Notes under the pieces: generated by a model
Seen by the model: the letters and a program-made list of their open reading frames with translations, nothing else
The model's database searches: none
What the model was told of the DNA's origin: nothing
Program-made: the position numbers and the translations under genes
Assembly: GCF_006345805.1 (NCBI RefSeq)
Contig: NC_043026.1
Location: 5,642,001-5,706,000 of the forward strand
Direction of reading: 5' to 3'
Source: Octopus sinensis
Taxonomy: Eukaryota
DNA length: 64,000 nucleotides
In this document: positions 4,632 to 49,094 of the stretch, piece by piece
Numbering within the stretch: position 1 is the first letter of the stretch
Layout of the letters: each line of letters starts with the position of its first letter

Positions 4632-4689
4632 ATGGCGGCCTTTGCGGTACGCCACCCAAGTCGAGCTTTGAAAAACGGCAGGCTACGAG
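4632..4689 (+). CDS. RICTOR: RICTOR coding exon 1 (MAAFAVRHPSRALKNGRLR-G)
   Basis: ATG 4632, donor GAG|GTAATA, 58 nt, phase 1. Resembles the RICTOR N-terminus (MAAIGRGRSLKNLRVRG) and splices in frame to exon 2. Confidence 0.9.
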
Positions 4690-7616
4690 GTAATACCATC
4701 TCTTCACACCATTTTCCTAATACTGTAGTTTCATTTACACATGCTTACGTCTATTTACGTTGTTCTTGTGTGTCTTCCACGCCCCTACGCTGCTTTAAAT
4801 CCATGCTTAATTAGATAGATGCTATTAAAATCCTATCTTGAAAATATGGTCCGTGTTTGTGAGACGTCGTAATATTGCGTGTGAGTGTATATATACACAC
4901 ATATACACCTATATATGTGTGTATATATGTATGTTAGTCCTTGTTTCTTATTCTGCTGTTTGTTTACTTACGACCCGTGTACTCTATCTTACACGCAAGC
5001 GCTATATTTATAATAATAATAAAGCAGGTTCTTTTTTTTTTATCTTGAGTTCAAAATATTATTAGGGTCGATTGTACTTCTCAGGCCTTCCGGGGGTCGA
5101 ATTGATAAAGTACTGGTGGGTGGGGGTTGAGGGAGTCGATTTAATCGACTGTGCCTCGATAATCCGTGGTGCTGTGTCAGTGTAAGAAATCCTTATTAAT
5201 TAGTTATTTTATTTAATTAATCGATTTGAGCGAGCACGCCCGTTTTACGTTCCGTGTTCAAATCGTCTGAAGGAGACGACTTTGTTTTACATCCTTCTGG
5301 GGTCGATAAATTAAGTCCTAGTTGATAACTGAGGTGACATGATGGTAGTGGTGGTGATGGTGGTGGTGTCTTAATCGACTGCGTCCCATCCCCGCCTATC
5401 GAAATCCGTTACCTTGTGACTTTTACTTTTCGGAATCATAATAAAACTCTCTAACATTGGCACAAGGCCAATAATAATTATTGTTGTGTCGGATAAAGTG
5501 CCTTGCAGTATTTGTTACTGCTCTTTACATTCTGAGTTCAAATCCCGCCGATGTCTGCTAGACCTTTCATCGTTTTGGGGTCAATGAAATAAAGTACCAG
5601 TTGAATACTAGGGCCGATGTAACCTACTGACCTTCCTCCCATTATGGCTGGCTTTGTGTCTAAATTAGCAACAACAACAATAATATTAGTTTCAAATTTT
5701 AACACAAGGCCAGCAATTTCGGGGGACTCGCGTGCATCAACCCATTATTCAACTGGTACTTATTTTCTCATCCCTGAAAGAATGAAAGGCAAAGTCGACT
5801 ATAGGCACAAGGCCCGAAATTTTTTAAGGGGGGAGGTGATTAGTCGATTACATCGACCCCAGTGTTTCGCTGGTGGTTAAGGACGGACAAACGGATTAGG
5901 TCGATTATATCGACCCCAATGCATAACTGGTACTTATTTAATCAATGCAGCGAGCTGGCAGAAACGTTAGCACGCCGGGCGAAATGCGTGGCCATATTTC
6001 GTCTGCCGCTACGTTCTGAGTTCAAATTCTGCCGAGGTCGACTTTGCTTTTCATCCTTTCGGGGTCGATTAAATAAGTACCAGTTACGCACTGGGGTCGA
6101 TGTAATCGACTTAATCCCTTTGTCTGTCCTTGTTTGTCCCCTCTGTGTTTAGCCCCTTGTGGGTAGTAAAGAAATAGGTACTTATTTAATCGACCCCAAA
6201 AGGATGAAAGGCAAAGTTGACCCTAGCAGAATTTGAACTCAGAACGTAGCGGCAGACGAAATGCCGCTAAGCATTTTGCCCAGAGTGCTAATGAATCTTC
6301 TAACTTGACACCTTAATAATAATAATAATAATAATTATAATAGTAATAATAATAATAATAATCTTTTCTACAATTGGCAGAAGGCTTGAGATTTTGGGGG
6401 AGGGGACTTGTTGATTACACCAACCCCAGTGCATAACTGGTACTTGTTTCATTGACCCTGAAATGAGGAAAGGCAAAATACCACATACTTTGTATATTCT
6501 TTTATTCTTTTACGTGTTTCAGTCATTTGACTGTGGCCATGCTGGAGCACCGCCTTTAGTCAAACAAATCGACCCCAGGACTTATTCTTTGGAAGCCTAG
6601 TACTTATTCTATCGGTTTTTTTTTTACCAAACTGCTAGGTTATGGGGACGTGAACACACCAACATCGGTTGTGAAGCGATGTTGGGGAAACAGGGACAGA
6701 CAAACATACACACACATACATATATATGACGGGCATTGTAGGTAGGTATGAGAGACTAGATCTGGCTATTTTGAACATAAAACATGTAGAATATTCGGGC
6801 TGGTTTAAATGCTAAAAGTTTAAGGCTGTGGGCTGGCAGAAATGTTGTGGTACTGGACAAGATACTTAGTGGTATTTCCTCCAATAAGGCGGCAAGCTGG
6901 CAGAATCGTTAGCACGCTGGGTGAAATGCTTAGTGGTATTTCGTCTGCCACTACGTTCTGAGTTCAAATTCTGCCGAGGTCGACTTTGCCTTTCATCCTT
7001 TCGGGGTCAATAAATTAAGTATCAGTTATGCACTAGGGTCGATGTAATCGACTTAATACCTATGTCTGTCCTTGTTTGTCCCCTCTGTGTTTAGTCCCTT
7101 GTGGGTAGTAAAGAAATAGATATTTCGTCTGCCGCTACGTTCTGAGTTCAAATTCCGCCGAGGTCGACTTTGCCTTTCATCTTTTCGGGGTCGATTAAAT
7201 AAGTATCAGATACGCACTGGGGTTGATGTAATCGACTCAATCCGTCTTTCTGTCTTTGTTTGGCCCCTCTGTGTGTAGCCCCTTGTGGGTAGTAAAGAAA
7301 TAGGTATTTCGTCTGCCGTTACGTTCTGAGTTCAAATTCTGCCGAGGTCAACTTTGCCTTTCATCCTTTCGGGGTCGATAAATTAAGTACCAGTTACACA
7401 CTGGGATCGATGTAATCGACTTTACATACCAGTCTCGACCACTGGGGTCTATGTAATCAGCTTAGCCTTTCCCCCAAAATTGCTGGCTTGGTGTCAAAAT
7501 TATACACATATATATATATATATATATGATGGGACTGAACCTGCAACCGTGTGGTTGGAAATCAAGCTACTTACACACCCATTCTTACGTATATATATAT
7601 ATGTGTGTGTATATAT

Positions 7617-10041: not shown

Positions 10042-10065
10042 CTGATTATTATTTCTATCTTGCAG

Positions 10066-10113
10066 GTCGCCATGAAAGCGGCGAAGAAAATATTCGACTA
10101 GACTTATCCCGAG
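10066..10113 (+). CDS. RICTOR: RICTOR exon 2 (GRHESGEENIRLDLSR)
   Basis: ttgcag| ... GAG|gtcagt, 48 nt, phase 1/1. Matches human GRNDSGEENVPLDLTRE. Confidence 0.95.
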
Positions 10114-12041: not shown

Positions 12042-12491
12042 TACATTTATATAAAAAGCACCATCCGAACGTGATCAAAGCCAGATCTGCTTGATTGGCA
12101 CCTGTGAAGGTGGCGCATAAAAAGCACCCACTACACTCTCGGAGTGGTTGGCATTAGGAAGGGCATCCAGCTGTAGAAACTCTGCCAGATCAGATTGGAG
12201 CCTGGTGCAGCCATCTGGTTTGCCAGACCTCAGTCAAATTGTCTAACCCATGCCAGCATGGAAAGCGGACCTTAAACAATGATGATGATGATGATGATGA
12301 TGATGATATATATCATCTTCATCATTTAACGTCTGTTTTCCATGCTGGCATGGGTTAGGTGGTTTGACTGTAACTGGTAAACCAGAGGGCTGCACCAATG
12401 CAGTGCACCCCCCTCTCTCTCTCTCTCTCTCCTTAAACCTCAGTACTCAATCCCCACTAAACCTTACCCCTTCTCACCTTCTCTTTAACAG

Positions 12492-12651
12492 CCCCATCTG
12501 AGAATGTTAAGGAGGTTCTCAGCAATGTTGTCTGTCAGAACGGGATATCCAAGAATAAAAAACTTGGCTACCTCAACTTCTTTGTCAAGTTACTCAACAA
12601 ACTTGGCCCATCGAAGAACCTTGGCTACACCATGGAAGAGATCCTTTGCTG
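12492..12651 (+). CDS. RICTOR: RICTOR exon 3 (APSENVKEVLSNVVCQNGISKNKKLGYLNFFVKLLNKLGPSKNLGYTMEEILC)
   Basis: taacag| ... TG|gtaagt, 160 nt, phase 1/2. Matches EPSDNLREILQNV...KLGHLNNFTKLL...EDIIIC. Confidence 0.95.
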
Positions 12652-15763: not shown

Positions 15764-15895
15764 CCTGAAAGTTGGTCTCCTTCACGAAGCAAAAGAGGTG
15801 CGTGCTGCCACCTTGAGGGTAATTCGCTACCTACTCACCGAGCAGAAGGTTCTAGATATTATTGTCAGTTTACACATTGACTACCTCATAGCAAG
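15764..15895 (+). CDS. RICTOR: RICTOR exon 4 (CLKVGLLHEAKEVRAATLRVIRYLLTEQKVLDIIVSLHIDYLIAR)
   Basis: cttcag| ... AG|gtaagc, 132 nt, phase 2/2. Matches LRLALLNEAKEVRAAGLRALRYL...VDYLIAR. Confidence 0.97.
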
Positions 15896-16429: not shown

Positions 16430-16580
16430 ATATATACATCAGTATGTATATATATGTATATATATAAATATGTATGTATATGTATATATGTATGTATGTA
16501 TATATGTTATATATATATGTATGTATATGTATATTGTATATGTATATATGTATATATAAATGTATGTATATGTATATATG

Positions 16581-16833: not shown

Positions 16834-17024
16834 ATGTCTGGACATCTGCCTGAGCAACGAGGTCGAACGCATCCATGCCATGAAACTGATCCGGAAGATA
16901 ATCCAGCTGTTTCCCCACCAGGTGCCGCTGTCGATGCTCTACCCCATGGTGGCTATTGGCAGGGACGGCTCCTCCGAGAGGGATCGACTGAGGCGGGCTT
17001 GTCTTGCAACCATCTGTGAACTCG
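16834..17024 (+). CDS. RICTOR: RICTOR exon 5 ([21 protein letters not shown]...[22 protein letters not shown])
   Basis: ctctag| ... G|gtgagt, 191 nt, phase 2/1. Matches CIDIQQSNEVERTQALRLVRK...ERDRMVRACIAIICEL. Confidence 0.97.
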
Positions 17025-17152
17025 GTGAGTATTCCTACATTTGCTCTCTGTGTGTATGTGTGCACATGTATATGTGTGTGTGTGTGCCCCAGCATGGCCA
17101 CAGCTCGTGAGCTGAAACTAGATAAAGATAAAGATATATATATATATATATA

Positions 17153-18589: not shown

Positions 18590-19815
18590 GGTTACTGCCA
18601 CTTTCACACCACAACTACCATTACTGCTTTCACCACCACTATCACCACTTGTACTATAACCCACGTCCTAGAATGTGGTTATTAGTACCATTACACCACC
18701 ACAACCACAGCCTCTTGCATCACCACCACTACCACCACCACCACTACCACAACCACCACCACCACCATACTTGGTCATGTGGTATAATATTACTACTACT
18801 ATTACCACCATGGTAATCACACCACTACTATTACCACTACCACCACCACTACCAATACCACCACCAATACCACTATCACCACCACACTCAGTCATGTGGT
18901 ATTACACTGCTACTACCACCCTGGTAACCACCACCAACACCACCACTGTACTTGGTCATATGCTATAATATTACTATTACTATTACCACAATGGTAATCA
19001 CACTACCACCACCACTACTACTACTACCACCACCACTACCAATACCACCACTACCACTGCCATCACCACCACACTTAGTCATGTGGTATTACACTGCTAC
19101 TACCACCATAGTAACCACAATCACTACTACTACTACCACCACCACCACTACCACCACCACTACCAATACCACCACCACCACATTCAGTCATGTGGTATTA
19201 CACTGCTACTACAACCATGGTAACCACCACTGTACTTGGTCATATGGTATACTATTACTATTACCACCATGGTAACCACCACCAACACCACTACCAATAC
19301 CATCAATACCACCACCACCACCACTACCACCACTGCCATCACCACCAACACCGTACTTGGTCATATGGTATATTACTATTACTATTACCACCATGGTAAC
19401 CACACTACCACCACCACCACCACCACCATTACCACCACACTCAGTCATGTGGTATTACACTGCTACTACCACCACAGTAACCACTACCAATACCACTACC
19501 ACCACCACTACCAATATCACTACCACCATTACCACCACCACCACTACCAATACCATCACCACACTCAGTCATATGGTATTACACTGCTACTACCACCATG
19601 GTAACCACCACTGTACTTGGTCATATGGTATATTACTATTACCACCATGGTAACCACACTACCACCACCACCACCACCACCACCACCACCACCACCACCA
19701 CTACTACTACTACTACTACCATCACCACTACTACTACCACCACCACCATTACTACCATCACCACCACTACTACTGCCACCACCACCACCACCACCACCAC
19801 CACCATCACCATGTA
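18590..19815. repeat. Degenerate (CAC/TAC)n minisatellite with recurring cagtcatgtggtattacactgc / gtacttggtcatatggta motifs
   Basis: Directly visible; source of many false T/H/P-rich ORFs. Confidence 0.92.
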
Positions 19816-19862
19816 ATTTCCTATTGAAGTTTTCACTAGTTTTTCCTCCGCCCAAACATTAG

Positions 19863-19919
19863 GCACAAAAAAGACGGATGGACTGAGGCAAGTATGCCTT
19901 GCCACCTTATGTGAACTGG
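19863..19919 (+). CDS. RICTOR: Candidate duplicated/alternative RICTOR exon (G-TKKTDGLRQVCLATLCEL), paralogous to the 3' end of exon 5; alternative acceptor at 19840
   Basis: acattag| 57 nt, open in frame, G|gtaagt. 11/19 aa identical and ungapped versus 16967-17024. Confidence 0.55.
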
Positions 19920-20029
19920 GTAAGTACCACCTCTCCACACCGATCCATCTCTTCACTTTAACACTCCGTTCCAACTCACTAACGTTACACTCTCTCCATT
20001 AACTCTCTTCCCCCTCTCTCTCTCTCTCT

Positions 20030-21170
20030 ACATATCTATCTATCTATCCATTCATCTATTTATCTCTCCATCTATCTAGGGATCTATCTATTTGTATCTC
20101 TCTCTCTCTCTATTAGTATCTTTCTTTTTGTCTCTCTCTCTCTCTTTGTCTCTTTCTATTTGTCTCTCTCTCTCTATTTGTCTCTTTCTCTTTGTCTCTC
20201 TCTCTATTTGTCTCTCTCTCTCTATTTGTCTCTCTATATATTTGTCTCTCTCTCTATATATATTTGTCTCTCTCTCTCTCTATTTGTCTCTCTCTCTCTA
20301 TTTGTCTCTCTTTCTATTTGTCTCTCTCTATTTGTCTCTCTCTCTATTTGTCTCTCTTTGTCTCTTTCTCTCTATATTTGTCTCTCTCTCTCTTTGTCTC
20401 TTTCTCTTTGTCTCTCTCTCTATTTGTCTCTCTTTATTTGTCTCTTTCTCTTTGTCTCTCTCTCTCTATTTGTCTCTCTCTCTCTCTATTTGTCTCTCTA
20501 TATATTTGTCTTCTCTCTATATATTGTCTCTCTCTCTATATATATTTGTCTCTCTCTCTCTCTATTTGTCTCTCTCTCTCTATTTGTCTCTCTTTCTATT
20601 TGTCTCTCTATATTTGTCTCTCTCTCTCTTTGTCTCTCTCTCTCTTTGTCTCTTTCTCTTTGTCTCTCTCTCTCTATTTGTCTCTCTTTATTTGTCTCTT
20701 TCTCTTTGTCTCTCTCTCTCTCTATTTGTTTCTCTCTCTATTTGTCTCTCTCTCTATTTGTCTCTCTCTCTCTTTGTCTCTCTTTGTTTCTTTCTCTTTG
20801 TCTCTCTCTCTCTATTTGTTTCTCTCTCTATTTGTCTCTCTCTCTCTCTATTTGTTTCTCTCTCTATTTGTCTCTCTCTCTCTATTTGTCTCTCTCTCTA
20901 TTTGTCTCACTCTCTCTATTTGTCTCTCTCTCTCTTTGTCTCTTTCTCTTTGTCTCTCTTTCTCTATTTGTTTCTCTCTCTCTATTTGTCTTTCTCTCTC
21001 TCTCTTTGTCTTTCTCTCTCTTTGTCCCGCTCTCCTCTCTCTCTCTATTTGTCTTTCTCTCTTTTTGTCTCTCTCTCTATTTGTCTCTCTCTCTCTCTAT
21101 TTGTCTTTCTCTCTATTTGTCCTCTCTCTCTCTATTTGTCTCTCTCTCTCTCTCTATTTGTCTCTCTCTT
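20030..21170. repeat. (CT)n-TATTTGT compound microsatellite
   Basis: Directly visible. Confidence 0.95.
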
Positions 21171-21540
21171 CTCTTACCTTCATCTTTTCCCGTCCATCTT
21201 CCATCTCTTTCTACATTGTCCTCTCCCTCCATCTCGCTCTCTCTCCCCCCGCATCTCTCCTCTTTAACAAACAACTCACACAATTCTATCTAACCATTAA
21301 AAAGAAATCTAATTCAAATTTATTACTCAGAGGCACCATCTGCACAAAAGAGCTACATTTAAGTGCGTGCGAATGTGTTGAATGTTGTGAGATTATTTAA
21401 AAAATCAATGTCTTATAGGAACACAGTATTTCATTATGCAATCATTACATAATATAAAGTATAGTAAATGCTTTATAAGCCAATACTGTGTTCTACTGTG
21501 TTAGCAGTGCTATAACATCATTTGTTAAGGTTATCTTTTA

Positions 21541-22361
21541 TCTCTCAATATATAAACAGCAAAATGTCTGTGTGTGTGTCCTTTATACAAATCCACAATT
21601 TTTCAGTTAGAGGGCTCACACCTTCTATGGTCATTCAAAACCGTCCAAGGGTGGTCGTGCACATCTTTACATTTCTCCAGTCGCCCCGCAAATCTCTCTA
21701 TATATAAATGGCAAAATGTCTGTGTGTGTGTCCTTTATACAAATCCACAATTTTTCAGTTAGAGGGCTCGCACTTTCTATGGTCATTCAAAACCGTCCAA
21801 GGGTGGTCGTGCACATCTTTAGTTTTCCCCAGTCACCCCGCAAATCTCTCTATATATAAACGGCAAAATCTCTGTGTGTGTGTCCTTTATACAAATCCAC
21901 AATTTTTCAGTTAGAGGGCTCGCACTTTCTATGGTCATTCAAAACTGTCCAAGAGTGGTTGTGCACATCTTTACATTTCCCCAGTCACCCCGCAAATCTC
22001 TCTATATATAAACGGCAAAATCTCTGTGTGTGTGTGTCCTTTATACAAATCCACAATTTTTCAGTTAGAGGGCTCGCACTTTCTATAGTCATTCAAAACC
22101 GTCCAAGGGTGGTCATGCACATCTTTACATTTCCCCAGTCACCCCGCAAAGCCATTAAAAATCAATAGAAGTGACTTTTCTGTGAATTTTCTATCCAAAA
22201 CCCAATCAAAATGCCTGAAACTTGATACGCCAATTGAATGCCAGCTAGCTGTATGTGATTGGTCGGAGATTTGGACAGTACTCGCATGTATGTGCGCATG
22301 CACGCAGCTGTATATGCATGCACTAGCACTATGACCCAGCAACGCCAGGTCATAGTGCTAG
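21541..22361 (+). mobile_element. Helitron-like element with four tandem 152-bp 5' segments
   Basis: The aaaat(g/c)tctgtgtgtg motif starts at 21561, 21713, 21865 and 22017, each after tctctatatataaa. The 3' end is cccagcaacgccagg...gCTAGt. Confidence 0.7.
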
Positions 22362-22654: not shown

Positions 22655-23430
22655 GAGTGGTGTGTGGTAAGTAGCTTGCTTACCAACTACATGGTTCCAG
22701 GTTCAGTCCCACTGCGTGGCACCTTGGGCAACTGTCTTCTACTATAGCCTCGGGCCGACCAAAGCCTTGTGAGTGGATTTGGTAGACGGAAACTGAAAGA
22801 AGCCCATCGTATATGTATATATATATGCATATGTATGTGTGCGTGTGTATATGTTTGTGTGTCTGTGTTTGTCCCCCCCCCCAACATCGCTTGACAATCG
22901 ATGGTGGTGTGTTTATGTCCCCGTAACGTAGCAGTTCGGCAAAAGAGACCGATAGAATAAGTACTGGGCTTACAAAAGAATAAGTCCGGGGGGGGGGGTC
23001 GATTCGCTCGACTATAAAGGCGGTGCTCCAGCATGGCCACAGTCAAATGACTGAAACAAGTAAAAGAGACCGATAGAATAAGTACTAGGCTTACAAAGAA
23101 TAAGTCCTGGGCGGGGGGTCGATTTGCTCGACTATAAAGGCGGTGCTCCAGCATGGCCACAGTCAAATGACTGAAACAAGTAAAAGGGACCGATAAAATA
23201 AGTACTAGGCTTTCAAAGAATAAGTCCTGGGAGTGGGGTCGATTTGCTCGACTATAAAGGCGGTGCTCCAGCATGGCCGCAGTCAAATGACTGAAACAAG
23301 TAAAAGAGGCCGATAGAATAAGTACTAGGCTTACAAAGAATAAGTCCTGGGGGCGGGGTCGATTTGCTCGACTATAAAGGCTGTGCTCCAGCATGGCCGC
23401 AGTCGAATGACTGAAACAAGTAAAAGAGTA
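22655..23430 (+). mobile_element. SINE family B with its 120-bp tail repeated four times
   Basis: gatagaataagtact...gaaacaagtaaaagag at about 22951, 23072, 23192 and 23311. Confidence 0.85.
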
Positions 23431-24409: not shown

Positions 24410-24582
24410 CATTTGTGAACGCCCAGGCAGCTGACCGGTGCGATGCAATCAGCTGCATTCTGCGCAACATCCTGGACTGCTATCACTATCCACGGATCAA
24501 CGAGTCACTCGTGGTGACCGTGCTTTTCCTGCTAAACCATCCCAACACACGGCACTACATCAAACAGAACACTGACCTTGAG
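24410..24582 (+). CDS. RICTOR: RICTOR exon 6 (AFVNAQAADRCDAISCILRNILDCYHYPRINESLVVTVLFLLNHPNTRHYIKQNTDLE)
   Basis: ctgcag| ... GAG|gtgagt, 173 nt, phase 1/0. Matches ILKNVIDC-QLSRINEALITTILHLLNHPKTRQYV. Confidence 0.97.
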
Positions 24583-24800
24583 GTGAGTACTAACTACACA
24601 CTATTGCCATCATTTAGCATCCTGTTTTTTACACACACACACACACAAGTAGCTTGCTTACCAACCGCTTTATTCCGGGTTCAGTCCCACTGCGTGGCAC
24701 CTTGGGCAAGTGTCTTCTACTATAGCCTCTGGTCGACCAAAGCTTTGTGAGTGGATTTGTGACAGAAACTGAAAGAAGTCCATCGTATATATATATATAT

Positions 24801-25380: not shown

Positions 25381-27144
25381 TATATATATGTATATATATA
25401 TATATCGGTCCCTCTTGCCGAACCGCTAAGTGACGGGGAAGTAAACACACCAGCATCGGTTGTCATGCGATGTTGGGGGGGGACAAATACAGACACACAA
25501 ACATATACATACACATATATATATATGTGTGCGTGTGTGTTTGTGTGTCTGTGTTGTTCCCCCCAACATTGCTTGACAACCGATGCTGGTGTGTTTATGT
25601 CCTCATCACTTAGCGGTTCGGCAAAAGAGACCGATAAAATAAGTACTGGGCTTACAAAGAATTAGTCCTGGGGTCGATTTGCTCGACTAAAGGTGGTGCT
25701 CCAGCATGGCCACAGTCAAATGACTGAAACAAGTAAAAGAATAAAAGAATACATACATATGTAGGAGTGGCTGTGTGGTAAGTAGCTTGCTTACAAACCA
25801 CATGGTTCTGGGTTCAGTCTCACTGCTGGAGAGAAAGCATTGAAATAAAATAATTGACTCGTGTAAAAACGAGATTTTCAGAATCCTCTATTGGAGTCCC
25901 AGACTTCGGTGGCAGCAATGCCTGCAAATTGCACAAAATTTACTGGGGAAAGAATTGTAGAGGTTTATTGCCCCTAATTTGTGTAGAAATTGTAATTTGT
26001 GGTTAGATGGACTTTTTGGTCGAAAGATATTGTATTTTGAATTGTAAGGGGGTCATTACCTCGATATATGTATTTTTAAAAACAATGTTTTAGAGAAGCA
26101 GAGGATCAGCAGGCACCTTCTGCCTTCTCCCATCTTTACCATTTTAGTGCCAGTGGCACGTAAGAGAACCATCCGAACGTGTGCGTAGCCAGCGCCGCAT
26201 CGCCTGGCCTCCGTGCTGGTGGCACGTAACAAACACCATCCGATTGTGGCCGTTGCCAGCCTCGCCTGGCCTCCGTGCCGGTGGCACATAACAAACACCA
26301 TCCGAGCGTGGCCGTTCGCGAGCCTCATCTGGCACCTGTGTCAGTGGCACGTAAAAAGCACCCACTACACTCACGGAGTGGTTGGCGTTAGGAAGGGCAT
26401 CCAGCTGTAGAAACACTGCCAGATTTGACTGGACCTGGTGCAGCCTTCAGGCTTCCCAGACCCAGTTGAACCGTCCAACCCATGCTAGCATGGAAAGCGG
26501 ATGTTAAACGATGATGATGATGATGATCCACCTCATTAATGTTCATGTCCAGCCCGCAAGCCACCTATCTTTGTACTGCCTCTATGGCAAATTTGATAAA
26601 ATAAAGTAGCTTGCTTACCAACCACATGGTTCCAGATTCAGTCCCACTGCATGGCACCTTGGGCAGGTGTCTTCTACTATAACCTCTTGATTTATATTAG
26701 CCCTTGTGGCCTATAAAACTTGAATTAATTATTATTATTGTTATTGTTAAGGTAGTCATCGTCATCATCATCGTTTAGCGTCCGCTTTCCATGCTGGCAT
26801 GGGTTGGATGGTGCAACTGGGATCTGGGAAGCCAGAAGGCTGCACCAGGCCCAGTCTGATCTGGCAATGTTTCTACGGCTGGATGCCCTTCCTAATGCCA
26901 ACCACTCCGTGAGTGTAGTGGGTGCTTTTTATGTGCCGCTGGCACAGGTGCCAGACGAGGCTGGCAAACAGCCACACTTGGATGGTGCTTTTTACGTGCC
27001 ACCGGCATGGAGGCCAGGCGAGGCTGGCAATGGCCATGATTGGATGGTGCTTTTTACGTGCCACCGGCATGGGGGCCAGGTGAGGCTGGCAACAGTCACT
27101 ATCGGATGGTGATTTATACGTGCCACCGGCACGAAAGCTAGTCG

Positions 27145-31070: not shown

Positions 31071-33649
31071 AGAGAGAAGGAGAAGGAATACACATTGAAT
31101 AATGTACTCCTAGATATATTATGACTGTGAAAGCAAACAAAAAAGTAAATAAAATATATAAATAGAAGCTTGTATGGTCACTACTCTTTCAGGTCTGACC
31201 TAGGGCTAAACAGGAGCAACAGCAGCAATAACCCTTACAGAAGGAGATCCTAGACAGCGGTGTTGTTGTTTAACCCCAGGTCAGCCTTAATCGAGCAGAC
31301 TGATGATGAGAGGCATTCCAACCATGACCATCCTGTCTCTCCCCAACCCCACCGCCCTTGATTTGTGTAGGAAACTCAGGACTGTTATTCAATGTGTCCC
31401 TTCCTTTTCTAAGATGGCGTAGTGTGAGCTTCGAGGGAGATTTGGCTGCTGTTTCTAGCAGGCTGCACGTTATTTGTAAGAGACAGCATACTGGAGCAAA
31501 ATGGGGAATTTGTTTTGTTTGGGGAAAAAAAAAAAAAAGGGGTCATGTCCCCACCTTTCTCCTCTTCCTCCTCCTCTCCTTTATTATCTGGTTGTTACAG
31601 CTATTCTCCTCCTCCTCCTCCTTTCCATACCACCACCATCACCACCATCACCACCATCACCACCGCTGCTGCCTGGATACCATTGCAGCTGTGTCCCATG
31701 CCACGTCCGTCCACTCACACCCCTGTGATCCCTTGTAGGGTGGATTTATATTTGTTGATTGGTTCAATCCAGACTAATTCATTAATCTCCGTTCCCCCCT
31801 AATGACCTAATGATAACAGAGCATGATTCAACACCCCCTGCTTATCCTTATCGTCCCCTTTTCTTTTCCTTCCTTTTTTTTTTTTGTTTTACTTCACCTG
31901 TTCAGGACCCACCAGACAGAAGATGGAATTGTATGTATGTTTGTGTGTGTGTGTGTGTGTGTATAAATAATATATATATATATATATATATGTAAATATA
32001 GGCGCAGGAGTGGCTGTGTGGTAAGTAGCTTGCTAACCAACCACATGGTTCTGGGTTCAGTCCCACTGCGTGGCACCTTGGGCAAGTGTCTTCTACTATA
32101 GCCTCGGGCCGACCAAAGCCTTGTGAGTGGATTTGGTTGACGGAAACTGAAAGAAGCCCGTCGTATGTATATAGTTATGTGTGTGTTTGTGTGTCTGTGT
32201 TTGTCCCCCTAGCATTGCTTGACAACCGATGCTGGTGTGTTTATGTCCCCGTTACTTAGCGGTTCGGCAAAAGAGACCGATAGAATAAGTACTGGGCTTA
32301 CAAAGAATAAGTCCCGGGGTCGATTTGCTCGACTAAAGGCAGTGCTCCAGCATGGCCACAGTCAAATGACTGAAACAAGTAAAAGAGTAAAGTGTATATG
32401 GATATATGCAAACATATATATTGGGTCGTCTGGAAAGTTCGTGGCGAGCTGGCAGAATCGTTAGCACACAGGGTGAAATGCTTAGCGGTATTTTGTCTGC
32501 TGCTACGTTAGGAGTTCAAATTCCACCAAGGTCGACTTTGTCTATCATCCTCTCGGGGTCGATAAATTAAGTACCAGTTGCATACGAGGGTCGATTTGAT
32601 TGACTGGACCTCCCCCAAAAAAAATTTAGGGCCTTGTGCCTAGAGTAGAAAAGGATATTTATTAATCCAAAAGTGGTGACCTGGCAGAATCATTAGCACA
32701 CTGGATGAAATGCTTAGCGGTATTTCGTCTGCTGCTACGTTCTGAGTTCAAATTCCACCAAGGTCGACTTTGTCTATCATCCTCTCAGGGTTGATAAATT
32801 AAGTACCAGTTGCATACTGGGGCCGATCTGATCAACTGGACCCCTCCCCCCCACAAAAAATTTTGGACCTTGTGCCTAGGTGGCGAACTGGCAGAATCGT
32901 TAGCACACCGGGTGAAATGTTTAGCGGTATTTTGTCTATCTTTATGTTCTGAGTTCAAATTCCACCGAAGTTGACTTTGCCTTTCATCCTCTCGGGGCCC
33001 GATGAATTAAGTACCAGTTGCATACTTGGGTCGATCTGATTGACTGCCCTGCACCCCCACCCCCCAAAAAAATTCGGGCTTTGTGCCTAGAGTAGAAATG
33101 AATATTCCGGATTTTTCCGCCGAGATCACCTTTGCCTTTCATCCTTTCGGGGGTCGACTGGCCCCATTCCCCTCAAAAATTTCAGGCCTTCTGCCTAGAG
33201 TAGAAAAGAATATTCCGGATTTTAAAAAATTAATCTCTCTCTCTCTCTCTCTCACACTTATCTTACCTTTTGAATTAGCCTGCTTGTTTATCCCTTCTCT
33301 GTTGACCCCTCTCTCTTTCTTTCCTACCCTTTTTGGACCTCTTCCCCCCCTCATTTGCTCCCCCTCCTGCCTCGGTTTGCAGTTTTCTTTTTATTTCTGC
33401 GTTTGTGTTTCTTGTACTAATTGAGAACGCATTAATTATGAATATGTATTGTATTTTTGTATGTGTATATTTACACATACCTATGATTGTGTATACACTT
33501 ATGATTGTGTATATACACTTATATATGCATACCCTGTGTTTATGTATAGTATATGTACCATTTCTGCTGATATATAAATACATAGACAATATATATATAA
33601 GTCAGTCTATAGTACATTTTGTGTGTGTGTGTGTGTATATATATATAAA

Positions 33650-40587: not shown

Positions 40588-41804
40588 GTAGGTACCCCAC
40601 ACAAGGCATTGGATCCTTGCCCCCACTCCTCAATTCCTTGGTTGATAGCCCTATTGTTGTTGTTGATGTAAGGCGGTGAGCTGGCAGAAACGTTAGCATG
40701 CCCGGCGAAATGCGTAGCCGTATGTCGTCTGCCACTACGTTCTGATTTTGAATTCCTCCGAGGTTGACTTTGCCTTTCATCCTTTCGGGGTCAATAAATT
40801 AAGTACCAGTTACCCACTGGGGTCGATATAATCAACTTAATCCCCTTGTCTGTCCTTGTTTTGTCCTCTCTGTGTTTAGCCCCTTGTTGGTAGTAAAGAA
40901 ATAGGTATTTCGTCTGCCGCTACGGTCTGAGTTCAAATTCCGCTGAGGTTGACTTTGCCTTTCATCCTTTCGGGGTCGATAAATTAAGTACCAGTTACCC
41001 ATTGGGGTCGATATAATCGACTTAATCCGTTTTCTGTCCTTGTTAGTCCTCTCTGTGTTTAGTCCCTTGTGGGCAATAAAGAAATATATGTTTGTTTGTT
41101 GAGTGAAGCGGTCTTCTGAGAAGTCCAAAACGCAGTCCTTTGCTATTCGTAAGACCCACAGAAGAGAAAGCAGGTCAACCCCCGACACCGAGAGTTTTAT
41201 TCCGTCTCTTTCTTTTAATTAGCCTATTATTGTTGTTGCTGCAGTTGCTGTTGAGCGAACGGTCTTCGTCCCTGAGCTCGCAAGATGGGAGAAGTCCGAA
41301 ACGTGGTCCTTTGGTATTCGTAAGACCCGCAGAAGAGAAAGCAGGTCAACCCCCGACACCGAGAGCATCGATGGATGGATGAATGCGCATCCAGGCTCAG
41401 CGGTTGCGTAGGAAGTCGGGGACAAGAATCAGGAAGAAAGAGTGAGAGAAAGTTGGGGCGAAAGAGTACAACAGGGGTCGCCACCACCCCCTGCCGGAGC
41501 CTCGTGGGGCTTTAAGTGTTTTTGCTCAATAAACACACACAATGCCCGGTCAGGGAATCGAAACCGCGATCCTCCGACCGCAAGTCCGCTGCCCTAACCA
41601 CTGGGCCGTTGCGCCTCCTGTTGTTGATGTGGTTCTGGTTCAGGGAACTGCCTCGTGGAAGGTGACCTTCAGTAAGTGCCTTAACAATCAGTGAATGAAT
41701 AGCTAGCCATCAGTGTTGTGAGTGACCATCAGCGGGCAGCTGAGTGACTGTGTGTAGATGACCATCAATGTTATAGGTGACCATCAGGGATTGACTGACT
41801 GTCA

Positions 41805-42175
41805 TACATCCATCCATCCATCTGTCCATCCATCCATTTGTCCATCCGTCCATCTATCCATCGGTCCATCTCTCCATCCATCGGTCCATCCATCCATCTG
41901 TCCATCCATCCGTCCGTCCATCTGTCCATCCTTCCATCTGTCCATCCATCCATCTGTCCATCCGTCCATCTATCCATCGGTCCATCTCTCCATCCATCGG
42001 TCCATCCTTCCATCTGTCCATCCATCCATCTGTCCATCCATCCATTTGTCCATCCGTCCATCTATCCATCCATCGGTCCATCCATCCATCTGTCCATCCA
42101 TCCGTCCGTCCATCCATCCATCCATCCATCTGTCCATCCATCCATCCATCCATTCATCTGTCCATGCGTCCACCC
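41805..42175. repeat. (TCCA)n microsatellite
   Basis: Directly visible. Confidence 0.95.
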
Positions 42176-43646
42176 ACGCACGTGTGTGTGTGGGTTCGTC
42201 TCCTGTCACAGTTTGACAACCGGTGTTGGTTTCTTTACGTCCTCCTAAACCAGCAGTTCAGCAAAAGAGATCGATAGAACAAGTACTAAACTTTGAAAAA
42301 AAAGTACTGTGGTCGATTCATTCGACTAAACAATAAAAAAATTCGTCGAGTCGGTGCTCCAGCTTGGCCACAGTCAAATGCCTGAAACGAGTGAACGATA
42401 ACAGATAATAAAGTGCTCATAACTTTGTTTTTATCAAACTGAATTACCTCCCTTAGTATTTTCCCCTTTTTAATTACCTTTGGAAGTTGTCTCCCTTGTT
42501 ATAAGAGTTGCCTCCCCTATCGAAATAAAAATGAAGTTTTTTTTTTGAAGCATAAAAGTGATTTTTTTATTTGTTTCAGTTATTTGATTGCGGCCATGCT
42601 GGGGCACCGCCTTGAAGAATTTTTAGATAAATCTATTGACCTCAGTGTTTATTTATTTTTTAAGCCTGGCACTGATTCTTTCGATCGCTTTTGCCGGACC
42701 ACTAAGTTACGTGGATGTACAGACACATACATGCAGATATAGTCCTGGGCTCGATTCCTGACATGGGAACGTAAATTTTTCTATAGGCGCGGGTGTGGCT
42801 GTGTGGCAAGTATCTTGCTTACCAATCACATGGTTCCAGGTTCAGTCCCACTGCGTGGCACCTTGAGCAAGTGTTTTCTACTATAGCCTTGGGCCGACCA
42901 AAGCCTTGTGAGTGGATTTGGTAGACGGAAACTGAAAGAAGCCCGTCGTATATATATATATATATATATATTATATATGTTTGTGTGTGTGTGTTTGTTC
43001 CCCCAATTTCACTTGACAACCGATGCTGGTGTGTTTACATCCCTGTGACTTAGCGGTTTGGCAAAAGAGTCCGATCATAGGCTTACAAAGAATAAGTCCT
43101 GCAGTCGATTTGCTGTGTAAGGCGGCGAGCTGGCAGAATCGTTAGCACGCCGGCGAAAAGTTTAGCAGTATTTCATCAGCTTCTACGTTCTGAGTTCAAA
43201 TTCCGCCGAGGTCACTTTGCCTTTTATCCTTTCGGGGTCGATTAAATAAGTATCAGTTACGCACTGGGGTCGATATAATCGACTTAATCCGTTTGTCTGT
43301 CCTTGTTTCTCCTCTCTGTGTTTAACCCCTTGTGGGTAGTAAAGAAATAGGTATTTCATCTGTCTTTATGTTCTGAGTTCAAATTCCGATGAGGTTGACT
43401 TTGCCTTTCATCCTTTCGGGGTTGATAAAATAAATACCAGTGGACTAACTAGGGTCGATGTAATCGACTTAATCCCTTTGTCTGCTCTTGTTTGGCCCCT
43501 TGTGGGCAGTAAAGAAATAAGAAACATTTCTCATGGCACCGGCACACAATTCACAGATGCTTACATTTTTTTATGTTTTCCATGAATTTTTCCTGCTAGT
43601 TATTATTATTATGATGATGATGATGATTATTATTGTCTATTTCCAG

Positions 43647-43747
43647 GCCAACACATTGTTACCCCATGAGTGCACAACCCATAGCCATTGTTTACCCAAC
43701 CTTATGGCTGTTGCCTCGTCCTTCGATATCCCGGGTCAACACAGACA
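43647..43747 (+). CDS. RICTOR: RICTOR exon 15 (ANTLLPHECTTHSHCLPNLMAVASSFDIPGQHR)
   Basis: tttccag| ... CA|gttaag, 101 nt, phase 0/2. Matches ANTILPHSHSHHLHCLPTLMNMAASFDIPKEKR. Confidence 0.95.
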
Positions 43748-43990
43748 GTTAAGTATATCATTTGTGTCTCTGTGTATGCATCCATGTATGTGTTTTCTAT
43801 ATGTTTATATATGTTTGTATATGCATAGGTGCAGGAGTGGCTGTGTGGTAAGTAGCTTGCTTACCAATCACATGGTTCCAGGTTCAGTCCCACTGTGTGA
43901 CATCTTGGGCAAGTGTCTTCTGCTATAGCCCTGGGCCGACCAATGCCTTGTGAGTGGATTTGGTAGACGGAAACTGAAAGAAGACCGTCG

Positions 43991-44021
<31 letters not shown>

Positions 44022-44036
44022 TTGTGTGTGTGGCTG

Positions 44037-44073
<37 letters not shown>

Positions 44074-44534
44074 TTGTGTGTGTTTGTGTGGGCCAGTGCT
44101 GCCCCGACTGGCCTCCGTGCCGGTGGCACGTAAAAAGCACCCACTACACTCACGGAGTGGTTGGCATTAGGAAGGGCATCCAGTTGTAGAAACACTGCCA
44201 GATCAGACTGGGCCTGGCGCAGCCTACTGGCTCCCCAGACGCCAGTTGAACCGTCCAACCCATGCTAGCACGGGAAGCGGACGTTAAACGATGATGATGA
44301 TGATGATGGTCATTCATCCGTAAAATTGGGTAATCTGTGCTTATTGATTTAATCTGTGGTTATGCTAATCTGTGTCTACAGTACTGTGTGAAAGTGCATT
44401 TATTAGTATGCGAGCATCTTGTTAGTCTTTCAGTAATTCTGTTAAATTCTGTATTTGTTTCTTGGCTTCTTAAATTATAATTTTTCTTTTTGCTTTTGCT
44501 TAAAATCTAAACCCCTAATTTGTTTGTCTTATAG

Positions 44535-44715
44535 CCGTGCTACGTTAGCGGTGAGTTACCTGAATCGCATCCATACCCTGAAAAAGCGCGGCCCGAGGCC
44601 GTGCAGCCTGTTTCTCGACCAACTCATCCAGAACGCAAACACCACGCTACAACAGGAGAGCTTCTACACTCAGTTCAGCCAGGACAAATTATCATCGGAT
44701 GCAGTGAAAACTGTG
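44535..44715 (+). CDS. RICTOR: RICTOR exon 16 (RATLAVSYLNRIHTLKKRGPRPCSLFLDQLIQ...DAVKTV)
   Basis: cttatag| ... GTG|gtaagt, 181 nt, phase 2/0. Matches RASAALNCLKRFHEMKKRGPKPYSLHLDHIIQ. Confidence 0.95.
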
Positions 44716-46012
44716 GTAAGTAGCGCATGGAGGTGGGGAAACGTTTGTGTGTGGGTTTGGGTGTGTCGAGAGGAAGGGTGTGTGGGGGTTTTTGCTTTTA
44801 TTTATGGAGAAGGCATCCGTGCTAGTGGAGCGCTAAGAGCACCATCTGAGCATGATCGTTGCCAGAGTGGCCAACTGGCTTCCATGCCGGTGGCACATAA
44901 AAAGCATCATTCAAGCGTGATTGTTACCAGCATCATCTTACTGGCACTTGTACCTGTGGCATGTGAAAAACATTCGAGTGAGGTCCATTGCCAGTGCCAC
45001 TGGACTGGCTCCTGTGCAGCTGGCACGTAAAAAACACCATTTGAGCGTGGCCATTGCCAGTACCCTCTGACTGGCCCTCGTGCCGGTGGCAGTAAAAGTA
45101 GAACAGTAAACAGCTGTACATATATAAGAATATATATATATATATATATATAAAACTCCATCCGAGCGTGGCCGTCTGCCAGCCACGTCTGGCACCTGTG
45201 TCAGTGGCACATAAAAAACACCATCCGAGCGTGGCCGTTCGCCAGCCTCGTCTGGCACCTGTGTCGGTGGCACACAAAAAGCACCCACTACACTCACGGA
45301 GTGGTTGGCATTAGGAAGGGCATCCAGCTGTAGAAACACTGCCAGATCTGACTGGCCTGGTGCAGCCTTCGGGCTCCCCAGACCCCAGTTGAACCGTCCA
45401 ACCCATGCTAGCATGGAAAGCGGACGTTAAACGATGATGATGATGATGACGATGATACATTTATATATATATATATTAATCAATTTAGGGTAGCAAAAAA
45501 TTCAATAGAAATTATTTTGTCACCAGCGGTCTAGTGAGAAAGATTAACATCCGTTTTCCGTCCTAGCATGGGTTGGACAGTTTGACCGGGGTCTGGGAAG
45601 CTAGACTGGCTGCACCAGGCTCCAATCCCATTTGGCAGTGTTTCTACAGCTGGATGCCCTCCCTAACGCCAACCACTACGTGTGTGTAGTGGGTGCTTTT
45701 TACGTGCCTCCAGCACAGGGGCCAGATGAGGTTGGCAAATCGGCCACGATCTGTTTGTGCTTTTTACGTGCCACCGGCACGGACGCCAATACACACAACA
45801 CTTTCTCTCTCTCTTACTCATATGGTGGCAGACATATAAACATGTACATACACACACGTGCTCACTGGCACACACATTTGTTCTGGTAAACGTGTACGCA
45901 CATGCTGGGCGGACACAGAAGCTGATATGCACATCATCATCATCATGAAGGAAATTATTATTGATGATGATGCTGATATATTCTCTTTCTTTTTCTCTCT
46001 GTCTTTCAATAG

Positions 46013-46117
46013 TTCAACGCTGATGACTTTGTAAGTCAGGTGATCAGAGAGACGCATGTATTGAGTACTAAGGAACACAAGAGCTGGGACTGGCATTCCA
46101 TATCTGCATTACTAAAG
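46013..46117 (+). CDS. RICTOR: RICTOR exon 17 (FNADDFVSQVIRETHVLSTKEHKSWDWHSISALLK); last RICTOR exon found in the window
   Basis: caatag| ... AAG|gtaccg, 105 nt, phase 0/0. Matches LRDSQVLQHKENLEWNWNLIGTILK. No later RICTOR exon recognised. Confidence 0.93.
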
Positions 46118-46331
46118 GTACCGTATACACTCTTCTCTTTTTCTCTCTGTGTTTATGTATAAATATATGTGTGTATATATATTATATATATATACATATA
46201 TTATATATGTATTATATGTGTATGTATATATATGTGTATGTATATATGTATAGTATATATATGTATATATTGTATTATATGTATATATATATATGTATAT
46301 ATATGTATATATATATTATATATATAATATC

Positions 46332-48959: not shown

Positions 48960-48994
<35 letters not shown>

Positions 48995-49048
48995 TTTTAC
49001 GTGGCACTGGCACGGGAGCCAGTCAGGGGGCACTAGTACCAACCACGA

Positions 49049-49094
<46 letters not shown>

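What the first reader, a model, noticed from the sequence alone, without database searches (positions are those of the whole stretch)
19840..19919. Diverged, splice-flanked duplicate of the RICTOR exon 5 3' end hidden in intron 5
Seen: between two large microsatellites, 19862-19919 aligns without gaps to 16967-17024 (GTKKTDGLRQVCLATLCEL vs [19 protein letters not shown], 11/19 aa). It ends at the homologous phase-1 donor (G|gtaagt). Three conserved residues differ only at silent positions (TGT/TGC, GCA/GCC, CTC/CTG), and the frame is open. Two acceptors work. The AG at 19861-62 gives a 57-nt phase 1/1 cassette that would tandem-duplicate this helix. The AG at 19838-39 gives an 80-nt phase 2/1 exon with the same phases as exon 5, so it could replace exon 5 mutually exclusively and delete most of that segment. 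Upstream FPIEVFTS faintly echoes FPHQVPLS, hinting the duplication was once longer. Established: this region lies in the armadillo-like N-terminal scaffold of RICTOR that contacts mTOR. Inference: a lineage-specific RICTOR isoform switch made by exon duplication.
Basis: partly seen in the sequence, partly recalled or inferred. Interest (0 to 1): 0.8.

Follow-up and report, generated by a model that had tools for sequence, protein, structure and literature searches.

The report
Conserved hidden RICTOR exon in cephalopods
A 57-base copy of the end of RICTOR exon 5 sits in the next intron of the octopus gene; octopus, argonaut and cuttlefish have all kept it as an intact protein-coding exon, so it is probably a real, unannotated extra exon of a core growth-control protein, although no RNA evidence could be obtained here.

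Summary
Window 19863-19919 is a 57-nt copy of the last 57 nt of RICTOR coding exon 5 (41/58 nt over 19862-19919, 11/19 aa; blastn E 1e-7). It has its own acceptor (TTAG|G) and the homologous phase-1 donor (G|GTAAGT).

It is not a dead duplicate. An orthologous copy lies in the same intron in Argonauta hians and in the cuttlefish Acanthosepion pharaonis. In both it is 57 nt long with the same splice sites and the same open frame. Octopus versus Argonauta shows 12 synonymous and 2 nonsynonymous changes (pN/pS about 0.06). It is the only collinear conserved island outside exons 2-5 between the octopus window and the cuttlefish locus. The bivalve Solemya velum has the same intron and no copy.

The only conserved productive reading is an in-frame cassette ("exon 5b") between exons 5 and 6. 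It adds 19 aa, (G)TKKTDGLRQVCLATLCEL. These repeat armadillo helix H3 with the same hydrophobic face, but four conserved charged residues are changed.

The upstream "echo" is not conserved either.

Untested: whether the exon is used at all, and whether it is alternative or constitutive. This is a new member of a known kind, a tandem-duplication-derived exon.

The parts
19863..19919 (+). Exon 5b: 57-nt in-frame (phase 1/1) candidate cassette exon encoding (G)TKKTDGLRQVCLATLCEL
   Evidence: Copy of 16968-17024. Orthologues are at L003 12956-13012 (Argonauta) and L001 79072-79128 (cuttlefish), with the same length, frame and splice sites. Ov-Ah: 12 syn / 2 nonsyn.
19840..19862 (+). 3' splice region of 5b: pyrimidine tract TTTTTCCTCCGCCC, then AAACATTAG with the acceptor AG at 19861-62
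   Evidence: ATTAG|G is shared with the cuttlefish; Argonauta has CCCCCAG|G. The purine stretch next to the AG in octopus and cuttlefish suggests a weak acceptor (inference).
19920..19926 (+). 5' splice site of 5b, G|GTAAGTA
   Evidence: Homologous to the exon 5 donor G|GTGAGTA at 17025-17031. It is conserved as GTAAGTT in Argonauta and GTGAGTA in the cuttlefish.
19838..19839 (+).
   Evidence: The cuttlefish has an AG at the same distance (-23) but an in-frame TAA follows it. Argonauta has no AG there. It may lie next to the branch point (TTCAC / CTGAT; inference).
16834..17024 (+). RICTOR coding exon 5 (191 nt, phase 2/1); its last 57-58 nt (16967-17024) are the parent of 5b
   Evidence: tblastn of P0014; exon alignment across the three cephalopods.
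15764..15895 (+). RICTOR coding exon 4 (ends in phase 2; splicing it directly to 5b would shift the frame)
24410..24583 (+). RICTOR coding exon 6 (starts in phase 1; accepts either exon 5 or 5b in frame)
19653..19811 (+). (ACC)n microsatellite directly upstream of 5b (part of a wider ACC-rich repeat from about 18.7 kb)
   Evidence: A CCA-rich repeat also precedes 5b in Argonauta.
20097..21174 (+). (TC)n / 16-18-nt TC-rich microsatellite downstream of 5b

Best explanation
Window 19863-19919 is a real but unannotated coding exon of RICTOR, 'exon 5b'. It arose before octopods and decapods (cuttlefish) split, by tandem duplication of the last ~57 nt of exon 5 together with its donor site. Selection on its peptide has kept it since then.

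It most likely works as an in-frame cassette spliced between exon 5 and exon 6 (17024>19863 and 19919>24410). This inserts 19 residues, GTKKTDGLRQVCLATLCEL, after Leu196 of the octopus protein, which corresponds to human RICTOR 194/195. The insertion falls inside helix H3 of one of the early armadillo repeats of the N-terminal domain.

The inserted piece is a second copy of the turn plus H3. It keeps the buried residues (D, L, C, L, A, T, L, C, E, L) but replaces four conserved charged residues (E, R, R, R become K/M, T, G/R, Q). It therefore probably presents a different polar surface on the part of RICTOR that docks on mTOR and SIN1.

Shown: homology, orthology, intact splice sites, a constant 57-nt length, and frame-specific purifying selection. 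Inferred: that it is spliced in as a cassette, that inclusion is alternative rather than constitutive, and every structural consequence.
For: (1) Paralogy with exon 5: 43/55 nt, E 1.2e-7, the only non-repeat hit in the window.

(2) Orthologues lie in the same intron and orientation in Argonauta hians (L003 12956-13012) and Acanthosepion pharaonis (L001 79072-79128). Each is 57 nt and flanked by AG|G and G|GTRAGT.

(3) Paralogue-specific residues are shared among orthologues and not with exon 5: T/P-K-K/M-T-D, Q, and Leu instead of Ile in CLAT-L-CEL. So the duplication predates the split and the copies have not been homogenised by gene conversion.

(4) Codon-level selection. Ov-Ah: 12 syn vs 2 nonsyn changes (pS 0.80, pN 0.05, Fisher 5e-8). 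Ah-Ap: 10.5 vs 7.5 (p 5e-4). Ov-Ap: 6 vs 6 (p 0.02). Differences by codon position in Ov-Ah are 3/1/10. Of the three sense-strand frames, only the RICTOR frame is free of stops in all three species, and it has the lowest pN/pS of all six frames; one antisense frame is also open.

(5) Specificity control. Between the 64-kb window and the 81.5-kb cuttlefish locus, the only collinear matches are exons 2-5 and 5b. 5b is 81% identical over 69 nt (E 7e-12), against 73-77% for the exons. Everything else is SINE-like or simple repeat. Synonymous sites of the exon 5 3' end (the parental 57 nt) are saturated between these species (pS about 1), so neutral DNA should not align.

(6) Frame logic. 57 = 19 x 3 with phase 1/1, so 5-5b-6 is in frame, whereas 4-5b frameshifts into a stop. 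There is no conserved phase-1 internal donor in exon 5 that would allow a swap.

(7) 5b still fits the family. Against a profile of 30 non-cephalopod RICTORs, putting 5b in place of the canonical 19 aa costs only 3-8 bits, while deleting the segment costs 55 bits.

(8) Location. The AF2 model of the octopus protein has H2 at 165-180, a turn at 181-182 and H3 at 183-199. The human equivalent is residues 176-194. This lies within the ARM domain (26-487), which sits between the mTOR Horn and Bridge and carries grooves for the SIN1 N-terminal helices (PMC7673708).
Against: There is no transcript or peptide evidence. The protein databases reachable here returned no sequence carrying the insertion: and none of the 170 proteins fetched. 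The two annotated octopod models that cover the junction (O. vulgaris CAI9743242.1, A. hians GAB1606230.1) go straight from exon 5 to exon 6. However, apart from those two gene models, which turned up only in the unindexed representative search, the databases returned almost no cephalopod RICTOR sequences and nothing transcript-like, so this absence is weak evidence.

A tandem second H3 helix is awkward for an armadillo repeat. A seven-residue linker would have to bring the chain back, or one of the two helices would have to be displaced.

The sample is small: 19 codons and three species. An unidentified cephalopod contig showed no copy within 17.9 kb upstream of exon 6. That is inconclusive, because exon 5 was not reached either.
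Confidence: 0.72

Rival explanations
1. Exon 5b is constitutive in coleoid cephalopods. Every RICTOR mRNA would contain it, and the annotated models simply miss it because homology-guided gene prediction follows the exon structure of other animals.
For: The same conservation evidence as for the best explanation. The donor is a perfect G|GTAAGT in both octopods. The cuttlefish model is visibly faulty at this spot: it reads through the exon 5 donor and ends with '...CELGE'. The O. vulgaris model is only 1078 aa, against 1644-1776 aa in other molluscs.
Against: Two independent octopod annotations join exon 5 to exon 6 directly. The acceptor has a purine-rich stretch next to the AG in octopus and a poor pyrimidine tract in the cuttlefish, which is more typical of a regulated exon. 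A permanent tandem H3 helix would be a surprising fixed change in a domain conserved across animals.
Confidence: 0.15
2. It is a conserved non-coding RNA element that is never translated. For example, it could be a decoy exon or decoy donor that modulates removal of the long intron 5, and it resembles exon 5 only because that is where it came from.
For: It has strong splice-site consensus and lies alone in a long, repeat-rich intron. Fifteen consecutive bases (ACAAAAAAGACGGAT) are identical between octopus and cuttlefish, including their silent positions, which hints at some constraint at the RNA level.
Against: Substitutions follow the codon pattern of the RICTOR frame: 10 of 14 Ov-Ah differences are at third positions, with 12 syn vs 2 nonsyn, and the RICTOR frame has the lowest pN/pS of the six. 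Of the sense-strand frames it is also the only one without stops. The 15-base block is not conserved in Argonauta, where it changes mostly synonymously. The length stays at exactly 57 nt.
Confidence: 0.06
3. It is a dead intronic duplicate (pseudo-exon) of the exon 5 end, produced by the repeat-driven duplication common in these genomes, and it has no function.
For: In the Argonauta locus, many RICTOR exon ends plus donors are repeated 2-13 times in the downstream intron. Such duplicates therefore arise easily, and most are surely neutral. The copy sits between microsatellites.
Against: It is retained, intact and in frame, in three lineages whose synonymous sites are saturated. It is the only collinear non-exon island between octopus and cuttlefish. 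pN/pS is 0.06-0.36.
Confidence: 0.03
4. One reading: an 80-nt exon (19840-19919, phase 2/1) that is used instead of exon 5 in a mutually exclusive way, deleting 37 residues.
For: In O. vulgaris the AG at 19838-39 and the open frame allow it. The cuttlefish also has an AG at -23.
Against: In the cuttlefish the extension contains an in-frame TAA. In Argonauta there is no AG at that position and the region is a CCA repeat. The extension shows no amino-acid conservation. Removing the segment costs 55 bits against the family profile.
Confidence: 0.03

Closest known systems
Tandem exon duplication-derived alternative exons (Kondrashov & Koonin 2001 and Letunic et al. 2002, from my own knowledge; human survey in PMC8373072)
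   Same: 5b is a neighbouring, same-strand copy of an exon with homologous sequence, the same donor phase and conserved hydrophobic residues, and paralogue-specific residues cluster on one part of the helix. It is ancient and conserved, as such events usually are: in the human survey, 100 of the 111 internal events with homologous exons have orthologues in fish (PMC8373072). 'Hidden' unannotated copies found by searching introns for similarity to flanking exons are the classic way such exons are discovered.
   Different: Only the last 30% of the exon was copied, so the copy cannot replace the whole parent exon. The phases (2/1 for exon 5, 1/1 for 5b) make a substitution impossible without an internal donor, and none is conserved. 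The predicted product is therefore a tandem insertion, not a homologous substitution. Mutually exclusive use is not enforced by frame.
Ordinary in-frame cassette exons with conserved inclusion or skipping
   Same: The length is a multiple of three, the phases are symmetric, the exon has its own acceptor and donor, two of the three species appear to have a weak acceptor, and both the skipped and the included forms stay in frame.
   Different: Its sequence is not novel or transposon-derived. It is a paralogue of the preceding coding sequence, and it duplicates a structural helix inside a folded repeat domain rather than adding a loop or a disordered segment.
Exon-end tandem arrays in the Argonauta hians RICTOR locus
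   Same: Both are an exon 3' end plus donor, copied into the downstream intron next to microsatellites. This is a plausible picture of how 5b began.
   Different: The Argonauta arrays are near-identical, young, multi-copy and lack an acceptor. 5b is single-copy, old and diverged at silent sites, and it has acquired an acceptor exactly at the edge of the copied segment.

Membership tests
RICTOR gene (Pfam RICTOR_N, PF14664) | The flanking exons encode the RICTOR N-terminal domain | tested here: met
   RICTOR_N at 145.9 bits against a cut-off of 28.5. 100% identity to O. vulgaris 'rapamycin-insensitive companion of mTOR-like'. Aligns to human RICTOR 88-251 in 6ZWM.
Tandem exon duplication-derived exon | Significant sequence homology to an adjacent exon of the same gene, on the same strand | tested here: met
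   43/55 nt, E 1.2e-7; 11/19 aa; 2.8 kb downstream of exon 5.
Tandem exon duplication-derived exon | Both copies conserved in orthologous genes of distant species | tested here: met
   Exon 5 and 5b are both present in Octopus, Argonauta and Acanthosepion. Orthologous 5b copies share 13-17 of 19 aa with each other, against 10-11 of 19 for any 5b compared with any exon 5 end.
Tandem exon duplication-derived exon | The copies are used as substitutes for each other (mutually exclusive splicing) | tested here: not met
   Exon 4>5b shifts the frame. There is no conserved internal donor in exon 5. The 80-nt variant is not conserved. Sequence logic predicts insertion, not substitution. Actual usage is not testable here.
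Functional coding cassette exon | Length a multiple of three, with an open frame and consensus splice sites in all species | tested here: met
   57 nt, AG|G ... G|GTRAGT, no stops in the RICTOR frame in all three species.
Functional coding cassette exon | Purifying selection on the encoded peptide (dN/dS well below 1, excess of third-position change) | tested here: met
   Ov-Ah pN/pS 0.06, Fisher 5e-8; Ah-Ap 0.25; Ov-Ap 0.36; codon-position differences 3/1/10. Only 19 codons.
Functional coding cassette exon | Spliced transcripts or peptides containing the exon | not testable with these tools
   No read data are available. The protein searches returned no sequence with the insertion, but they also returned almost no cephalopod RICTOR sequences.

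The most novel reading that the evidence does not exclude
Exon 5b is a tissue-regulated (for example neural) cassette that gives coleoid cephalopods a second, structurally distinct RICTOR. The extra H3-like helix keeps the armadillo core contacts but swaps four conserved charges on the surface that faces mTOR/SIN1 or another partner, so that mTORC2 assembly or substrate choice differs between tissues. That would be a lineage-specific isoform of a core mTORC2 subunit, made by partial exon duplication and kept since the octopod-decapod split (roughly 250-300 million years ago, from my own knowledge).
Probability: 0.3. Interest if true: 0.7.

Novelty: new member of a known kind. Interest (0 to 1): 0.55.

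Why it matters
RICTOR is the defining subunit of mTORC2, and its N-terminal armadillo domain is among the most conserved parts of the complex. None of the 170 RICTOR-family sequences fetched here carries a repeat of this helix.

A 19-residue paralogous helix, kept under protein-level selection across the deepest split of living coleoid cephalopods, would be a natural experiment on how that domain tolerates or exploits change. It would also be one more case of cephalopods diversifying a signalling protein after transcription.

On the practical side, current cephalopod gene models (O. vulgaris, A. hians, A. pharaonis) miss a conserved coding exon. Comparing introns between octopus and cuttlefish finds such exons cleanly, because nothing neutral still aligns.

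Tried and rejected
(1) Transcript-like proteins with the insertion. I searched with the exon 4-5-5b-6 peptide and with a concatenation of three reading frames that overlap 5b: the cuttlefish ORF starting inside 5b, the octopus open frame, and the octopus minus-strand ORF. There were no hits with the insertion. The indexed database returned only three cephalopod fragments, so this negative says little.

(2) Representative search of 1.84 billion proteins. All full-length hits span 165 residues for the 184-residue query, so none has the insertion. A motif scan of all 170 fetched proteins found no tandem helix. The sea-urchin isoforms differ at another site.

(3) Degenerate DNA pattern for the 5b 3' half plus donor against JGI metagenome contigs: 0 hits.

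(4) A fourth cephalopod: the ENA contig ctg105923l (L002), extended by one further look-up (L006). Neither 5b nor exon 5 lies within 17.9 kb upstream of exon 6, so this is inconclusive.

(5) Outgroups. Lottia RICTOR is intronless. The Potamilus gene is too long to fetch. Nucella and Mya are not on record. Only Solemya was informative: it has the same intron and no copy.

Only the canonical protein was modelled.

(7) Internal donor in exon 5 that would turn 5b into a true substitute. The only phase-1 G|GY present in all three species is ACG|GCTCC at the edge of the duplication. It has no other match to a donor consensus, so I rejected it.

(8) Gene conversion as the cause of the similarity. Rejected because 5b-specific residues, including Leu versus Ile, are fixed in all three species.

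(9) Literature searches (RICTOR + cephalopod + alternative splicing; exon duplication + octopus) found nothing about this exon.

Full report
**What is in the sequence.** The window carries the 5' part of an octopus RICTOR gene on the + strand. tblastn with the Octopus vulgaris protein CAI9743242.1 (P0014, 100% identical over the window's exons) places 16 exon matches: 4632-4691, 10059-10112, 12491-12649, exon 4 at 15764-15895, exon 5 at 16834-17024, exon 6 at 24410-24583, and ten more up to about 46.1 kb. Identity and name come; the exon 4-6 peptide matches Pfam RICTOR_N at 146 bits.

- 19862-19919 aligns without gaps to 16967-17024, 41/58 nt. The peptides are GTKKTDGLRQVCLATLCEL and [19 protein letters not shown], 11/19 identical.
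- The copy ends at G|GTAAGTA, homologous to the exon 5 donor G|GTGAGTA.
- AG at 19861-62 gives a 57-nt exon in phase 1/1. AG at 19838-39 gives an 80-nt exon in phase 2/1.
- The copy lies between an (ACC)n array (19653-19811) and a TC-rich array (20097-21174).
- The similarity is not chance. The best local match is 43/55 nt with E 1.2e-7, and it is the only hit of exon 5 in the window that is not a microsatellite.
- Similarity ends 7 nt into the intron and at about 19872 upstream. The frame is open for only 58 codons (19817 to about 19990).

**The decisive evidence: orthologues.** The protein searches returned a partial RICTOR model from the cuttlefish Acanthosepion pharaonis (P0001) and a model from the octopod Argonauta hians (P0015). 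I fetched both loci (L001; L003). Each has, in the intron after exon 5 and on the same strand, a 57-nt copy with the same boundaries.

| Species | Locus and coordinates | Sequence | Peptide |
|---|---|---|---|
| Cuttlefish | L001 79072-79128 | attag\|GG ACA AAA AAG ACG GAT CGA ATG ATG CAA ACA TGT CTT GCT ACC CTT TGT GAG TTG G\|gtgagta | (G)TKKTDRMMQTCLATLCEL |
| Argonauta | L003 12956-13012 | cccag\|GA CCT AAA ATG ACC GAC GGA CTG CGG CAG GTA TGT CTG GCC ACT CTG TGT GAG CTG G\|gtaagtt | (G)PKMTDGLRQVCLATLCEL |

The 5b copies resemble each other (13-17 of 19 aa) more than any of them resembles exon 5 (10-11 of 19). They share residues that exon 5 lacks, including Leu in CLAT-L-CEL where exon 5 has Ile in all three species. 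So the duplication predates the octopod-decapod split, and the two copies have stayed distinct since then. That rules out recent independent duplications and homogenisation by gene conversion.

**Selection.**

| Comparison of 5b | Synonymous | Nonsynonymous | Statistics |
|---|---|---|---|
| Octopus vs Argonauta | 12 | 2 | pS 0.80, pN 0.05, Fisher 5e-8 |
| Argonauta vs cuttlefish | 10.5 | 7.5 | p 5e-4 |
| Octopus vs cuttlefish | 6 | 6 | p 0.02 |

The parental 3' end of exon 5 gives 10/1, 14/3 and 16/4 for the same three pairs, with synonymous sites saturated in both comparisons with the cuttlefish.

Of the three sense-strand frames, only the RICTOR frame is free of stops in all three species, and it has the lowest pN/pS of all six frames; one antisense frame is also open. 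In the Octopus-Argonauta comparison, 10 of the 14 differences fall at third codon positions.

As a control for specificity, I compared the whole 64-kb window with the 81.5-kb cuttlefish locus. The only collinear matches are exons 2, 3, 4 and 5 and the 5b copy. 5b is 81% identical over 69 nt (E 7e-12), which is higher than the exons at 73-77%. All remaining hits are a SINE-like element or simple repeats. Comparing intron 5 with intron 5 gives 5b alone. A dead duplicate, or an element constrained only as RNA, does not predict this pattern.

**Which exon form.** Only the 57-nt form is conserved.
- In the cuttlefish, an in-frame TAA lies two codons upstream of the acceptor.
- In Argonauta the upstream region is a CCA repeat with no AG at -23.
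- The 80-nt "replacement of exon 5" and the supposed [16 protein letters not shown] echo are therefore not supported.
- No second copy of the first 44 codons of exon 5 was found in any of the three introns.

Frame logic leaves one productive use. Exon 5 ends in phase 1, 5b is phase 1/1 and exon 6 starts in phase 1, so 5-5b-6 is in frame. Exon 4 (which ends in phase 2) spliced to 5b runs into a stop. I also looked for a conserved phase-1 donor inside exon 5 that would let 5b replace the parental 19 codons, and there is none. The predicted product therefore carries both copies in tandem...[36 protein letters not shown]...

**Where this falls in the protein.** The octopus segment aligns to human RICTOR 88-251 (6ZWM chain E and others). 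The duplicated 19 residues correspond to human 176-194. This lies in the ARM domain (residues 26-487, nine ARM repeats), which sits between the Horn of one mTOR and the Bridge of the other and has surface grooves holding the two N-terminal helices of SIN1 (PMC7673708).

An AlphaFold model of the octopus protein (pLDDT around 90 in this region) shows helix 165-180, a two-residue turn, and helix 183-199. The copied unit is therefore the end of one helix, the turn, and most of the next helix (H3). The exon 5/6 junction falls three residues before the end of H3.

Against a profile built from 30 non-cephalopod RICTORs, substituting 5b for the parental 19 residues costs 3-8 bits, while deleting them costs 55 bits. 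5b keeps G, D, L, C, L, A, T, L, C, E and L but has lost E181, R182, R184 and R187, which are conserved in most of the 30 outgroup sequences (18-26 of 30). My inference is that 5b encodes an H3-type helix with the same buried face and a different polar face.

How two such helices in series are accommodated is unknown. The seven-residue linker is about long enough to return along a 13-16-residue helix, so one helix might take the repeat position and the other might pack outside it. The structure tool would not accept a spliced sequence, so this was not modelled.

**Distribution.** The protobranch bivalve Solemya velum has the same exon 5/6 boundary (...CLCTLCEL | VFHN...) and a 3.3-kb intron without any second copy. 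Lottia's RICTOR is intronless and so uninformative. Other mollusc loci could not be fetched. Nautilus was not available. The exon is therefore at least coleoid-wide and absent from at least one non-cephalopod mollusc.

**What is missing.** There is no evidence of use. No protein with the insertion was found. The two annotated octopod models that span this junction skip 5b; the cuttlefish model ends at exon 5. Apart from those two gene models, which came up only in the unindexed representative search, the searchable databases held almost no cephalopod RICTOR sequences and nothing transcript-like, so this is weak negative evidence.

I cannot tell whether 5b is alternative or constitutive. The purine-rich stretch before the acceptor in octopus, the poor pyrimidine tract in the cuttlefish, and the two annotations that skip the exon make me favour an alternative cassette. 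This is inference.

**Origin.** In the Argonauta locus, many RICTOR exon ends with their donors are repeated 2-13 times in the following intron, embedded in microsatellite-like arrays. Whether or not some of this is an assembly artefact, it shows a simple route: duplication of an exon end together with the start of its intron. A copy needs only to gain an acceptor at its upstream edge to become an in-frame cassette. In 5b the acceptor sits exactly at that edge.

**Comparison with known kinds.** This belongs to the well-described class of exons made by tandem exon duplication, which are usually ancient and functional (PMC8373072; Kondrashov & Koonin 2001 and Letunic et al. 2002 from my own knowledge). 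It departs from the usual case in two ways. Only the last third of the exon was copied, and the phases predict a tandem insertion rather than a mutually exclusive substitution. I found no report of it in the literature I could search.

**Verdict.** The core of the interpretation (a selected, coding, duplication-derived RICTOR exon) is supported by comparative evidence. The mutually exclusive variant and the "longer duplication" are rejected. Usage and regulation remain to be shown with RNA data.

Noticed in passing
L003 (Argonauta hians RICTOR locus): 15816-15863, 16454-16501, 25964-26418, 40810-42370, 43279-46292, 48013-50487; also 32282-32840: Exon 3' ends with their donor sites and the first ~100-400 nt of intron are tandemly repeated 2-13 times downstream of at least five RICTOR exons. 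One example is ITVACCHYIDFLIDSDV, with 13 extra copies. One array instead repeats an acceptor plus the start of an exon. Nothing like this is seen in the O. vulgaris window. It is either a striking mutational process or a long-read assembly artefact.
   Followed up: partly
L004 501-5435 (Lottia gigantea, KB203083.1): The Lottia RICTOR gene is one uninterrupted 1644-codon ORF, so it is intronless. The bivalve Solemya and the cephalopods share many intron positions. This suggests replacement by a retrocopy or wholesale intron loss.
   Followed up: no
L002/L006 (ENA assembly ERZ21867824, contig ctg105923l): A contig filed under a metagenome assembly is cephalopod host DNA carrying RICTOR exons 6-7. 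Its gene calls were made with TGA read as Trp, so the 'proteins' run through stop codons and fuse intron to exon.
   Followed up: partly
P0014 (O. vulgaris CAI9743242.1) versus window and other molluscs: The annotated O. vulgaris RICTOR model is 1078 aa, against 1644-1776 aa in other molluscs, and its last third has very low AlphaFold confidence. It is probably incomplete or mis-joined. The cuttlefish model (198 aa) reads through the exon 5 donor and ends '...CELGE'.
   Followed up: partly
window 47001-47100: A run of exactly 100 N (a scaffold gap) lies just downstream of the last RICTOR exon mapped in the window (46013-46123).
   Followed up: yes
window, 22 sites, e.g. 17199, 17388, 18242, 22693, 24671, 61039(-): A SINE-like element about 190 nt long (core GGTTCCGGGTTCAGTCCCACTG, translating as ...PRSGTEPGTMWLVSKLLTTQPLL...) occurs 22 times on both strands. 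A related copy in the cuttlefish locus (L001 64320-64413) accounts for most of the non-exon cross-species hits.
   Followed up: partly
window 21540-22150 and 22941-23428: Two minisatellites lie in intron 5 downstream of 5b: a 152-nt unit x4 and a 120-nt unit x4.1, each 94% identical between copies.
   Followed up: no
window 16967-16969; L003 and L001 equivalents: The Gly codon at the upstream edge of the duplicated segment in exon 5 is GGC in all three cephalopods, although most other silent sites are saturated. This could be chance (about 6%) or a weak hint of constraint at that boundary.
   Followed up: partly
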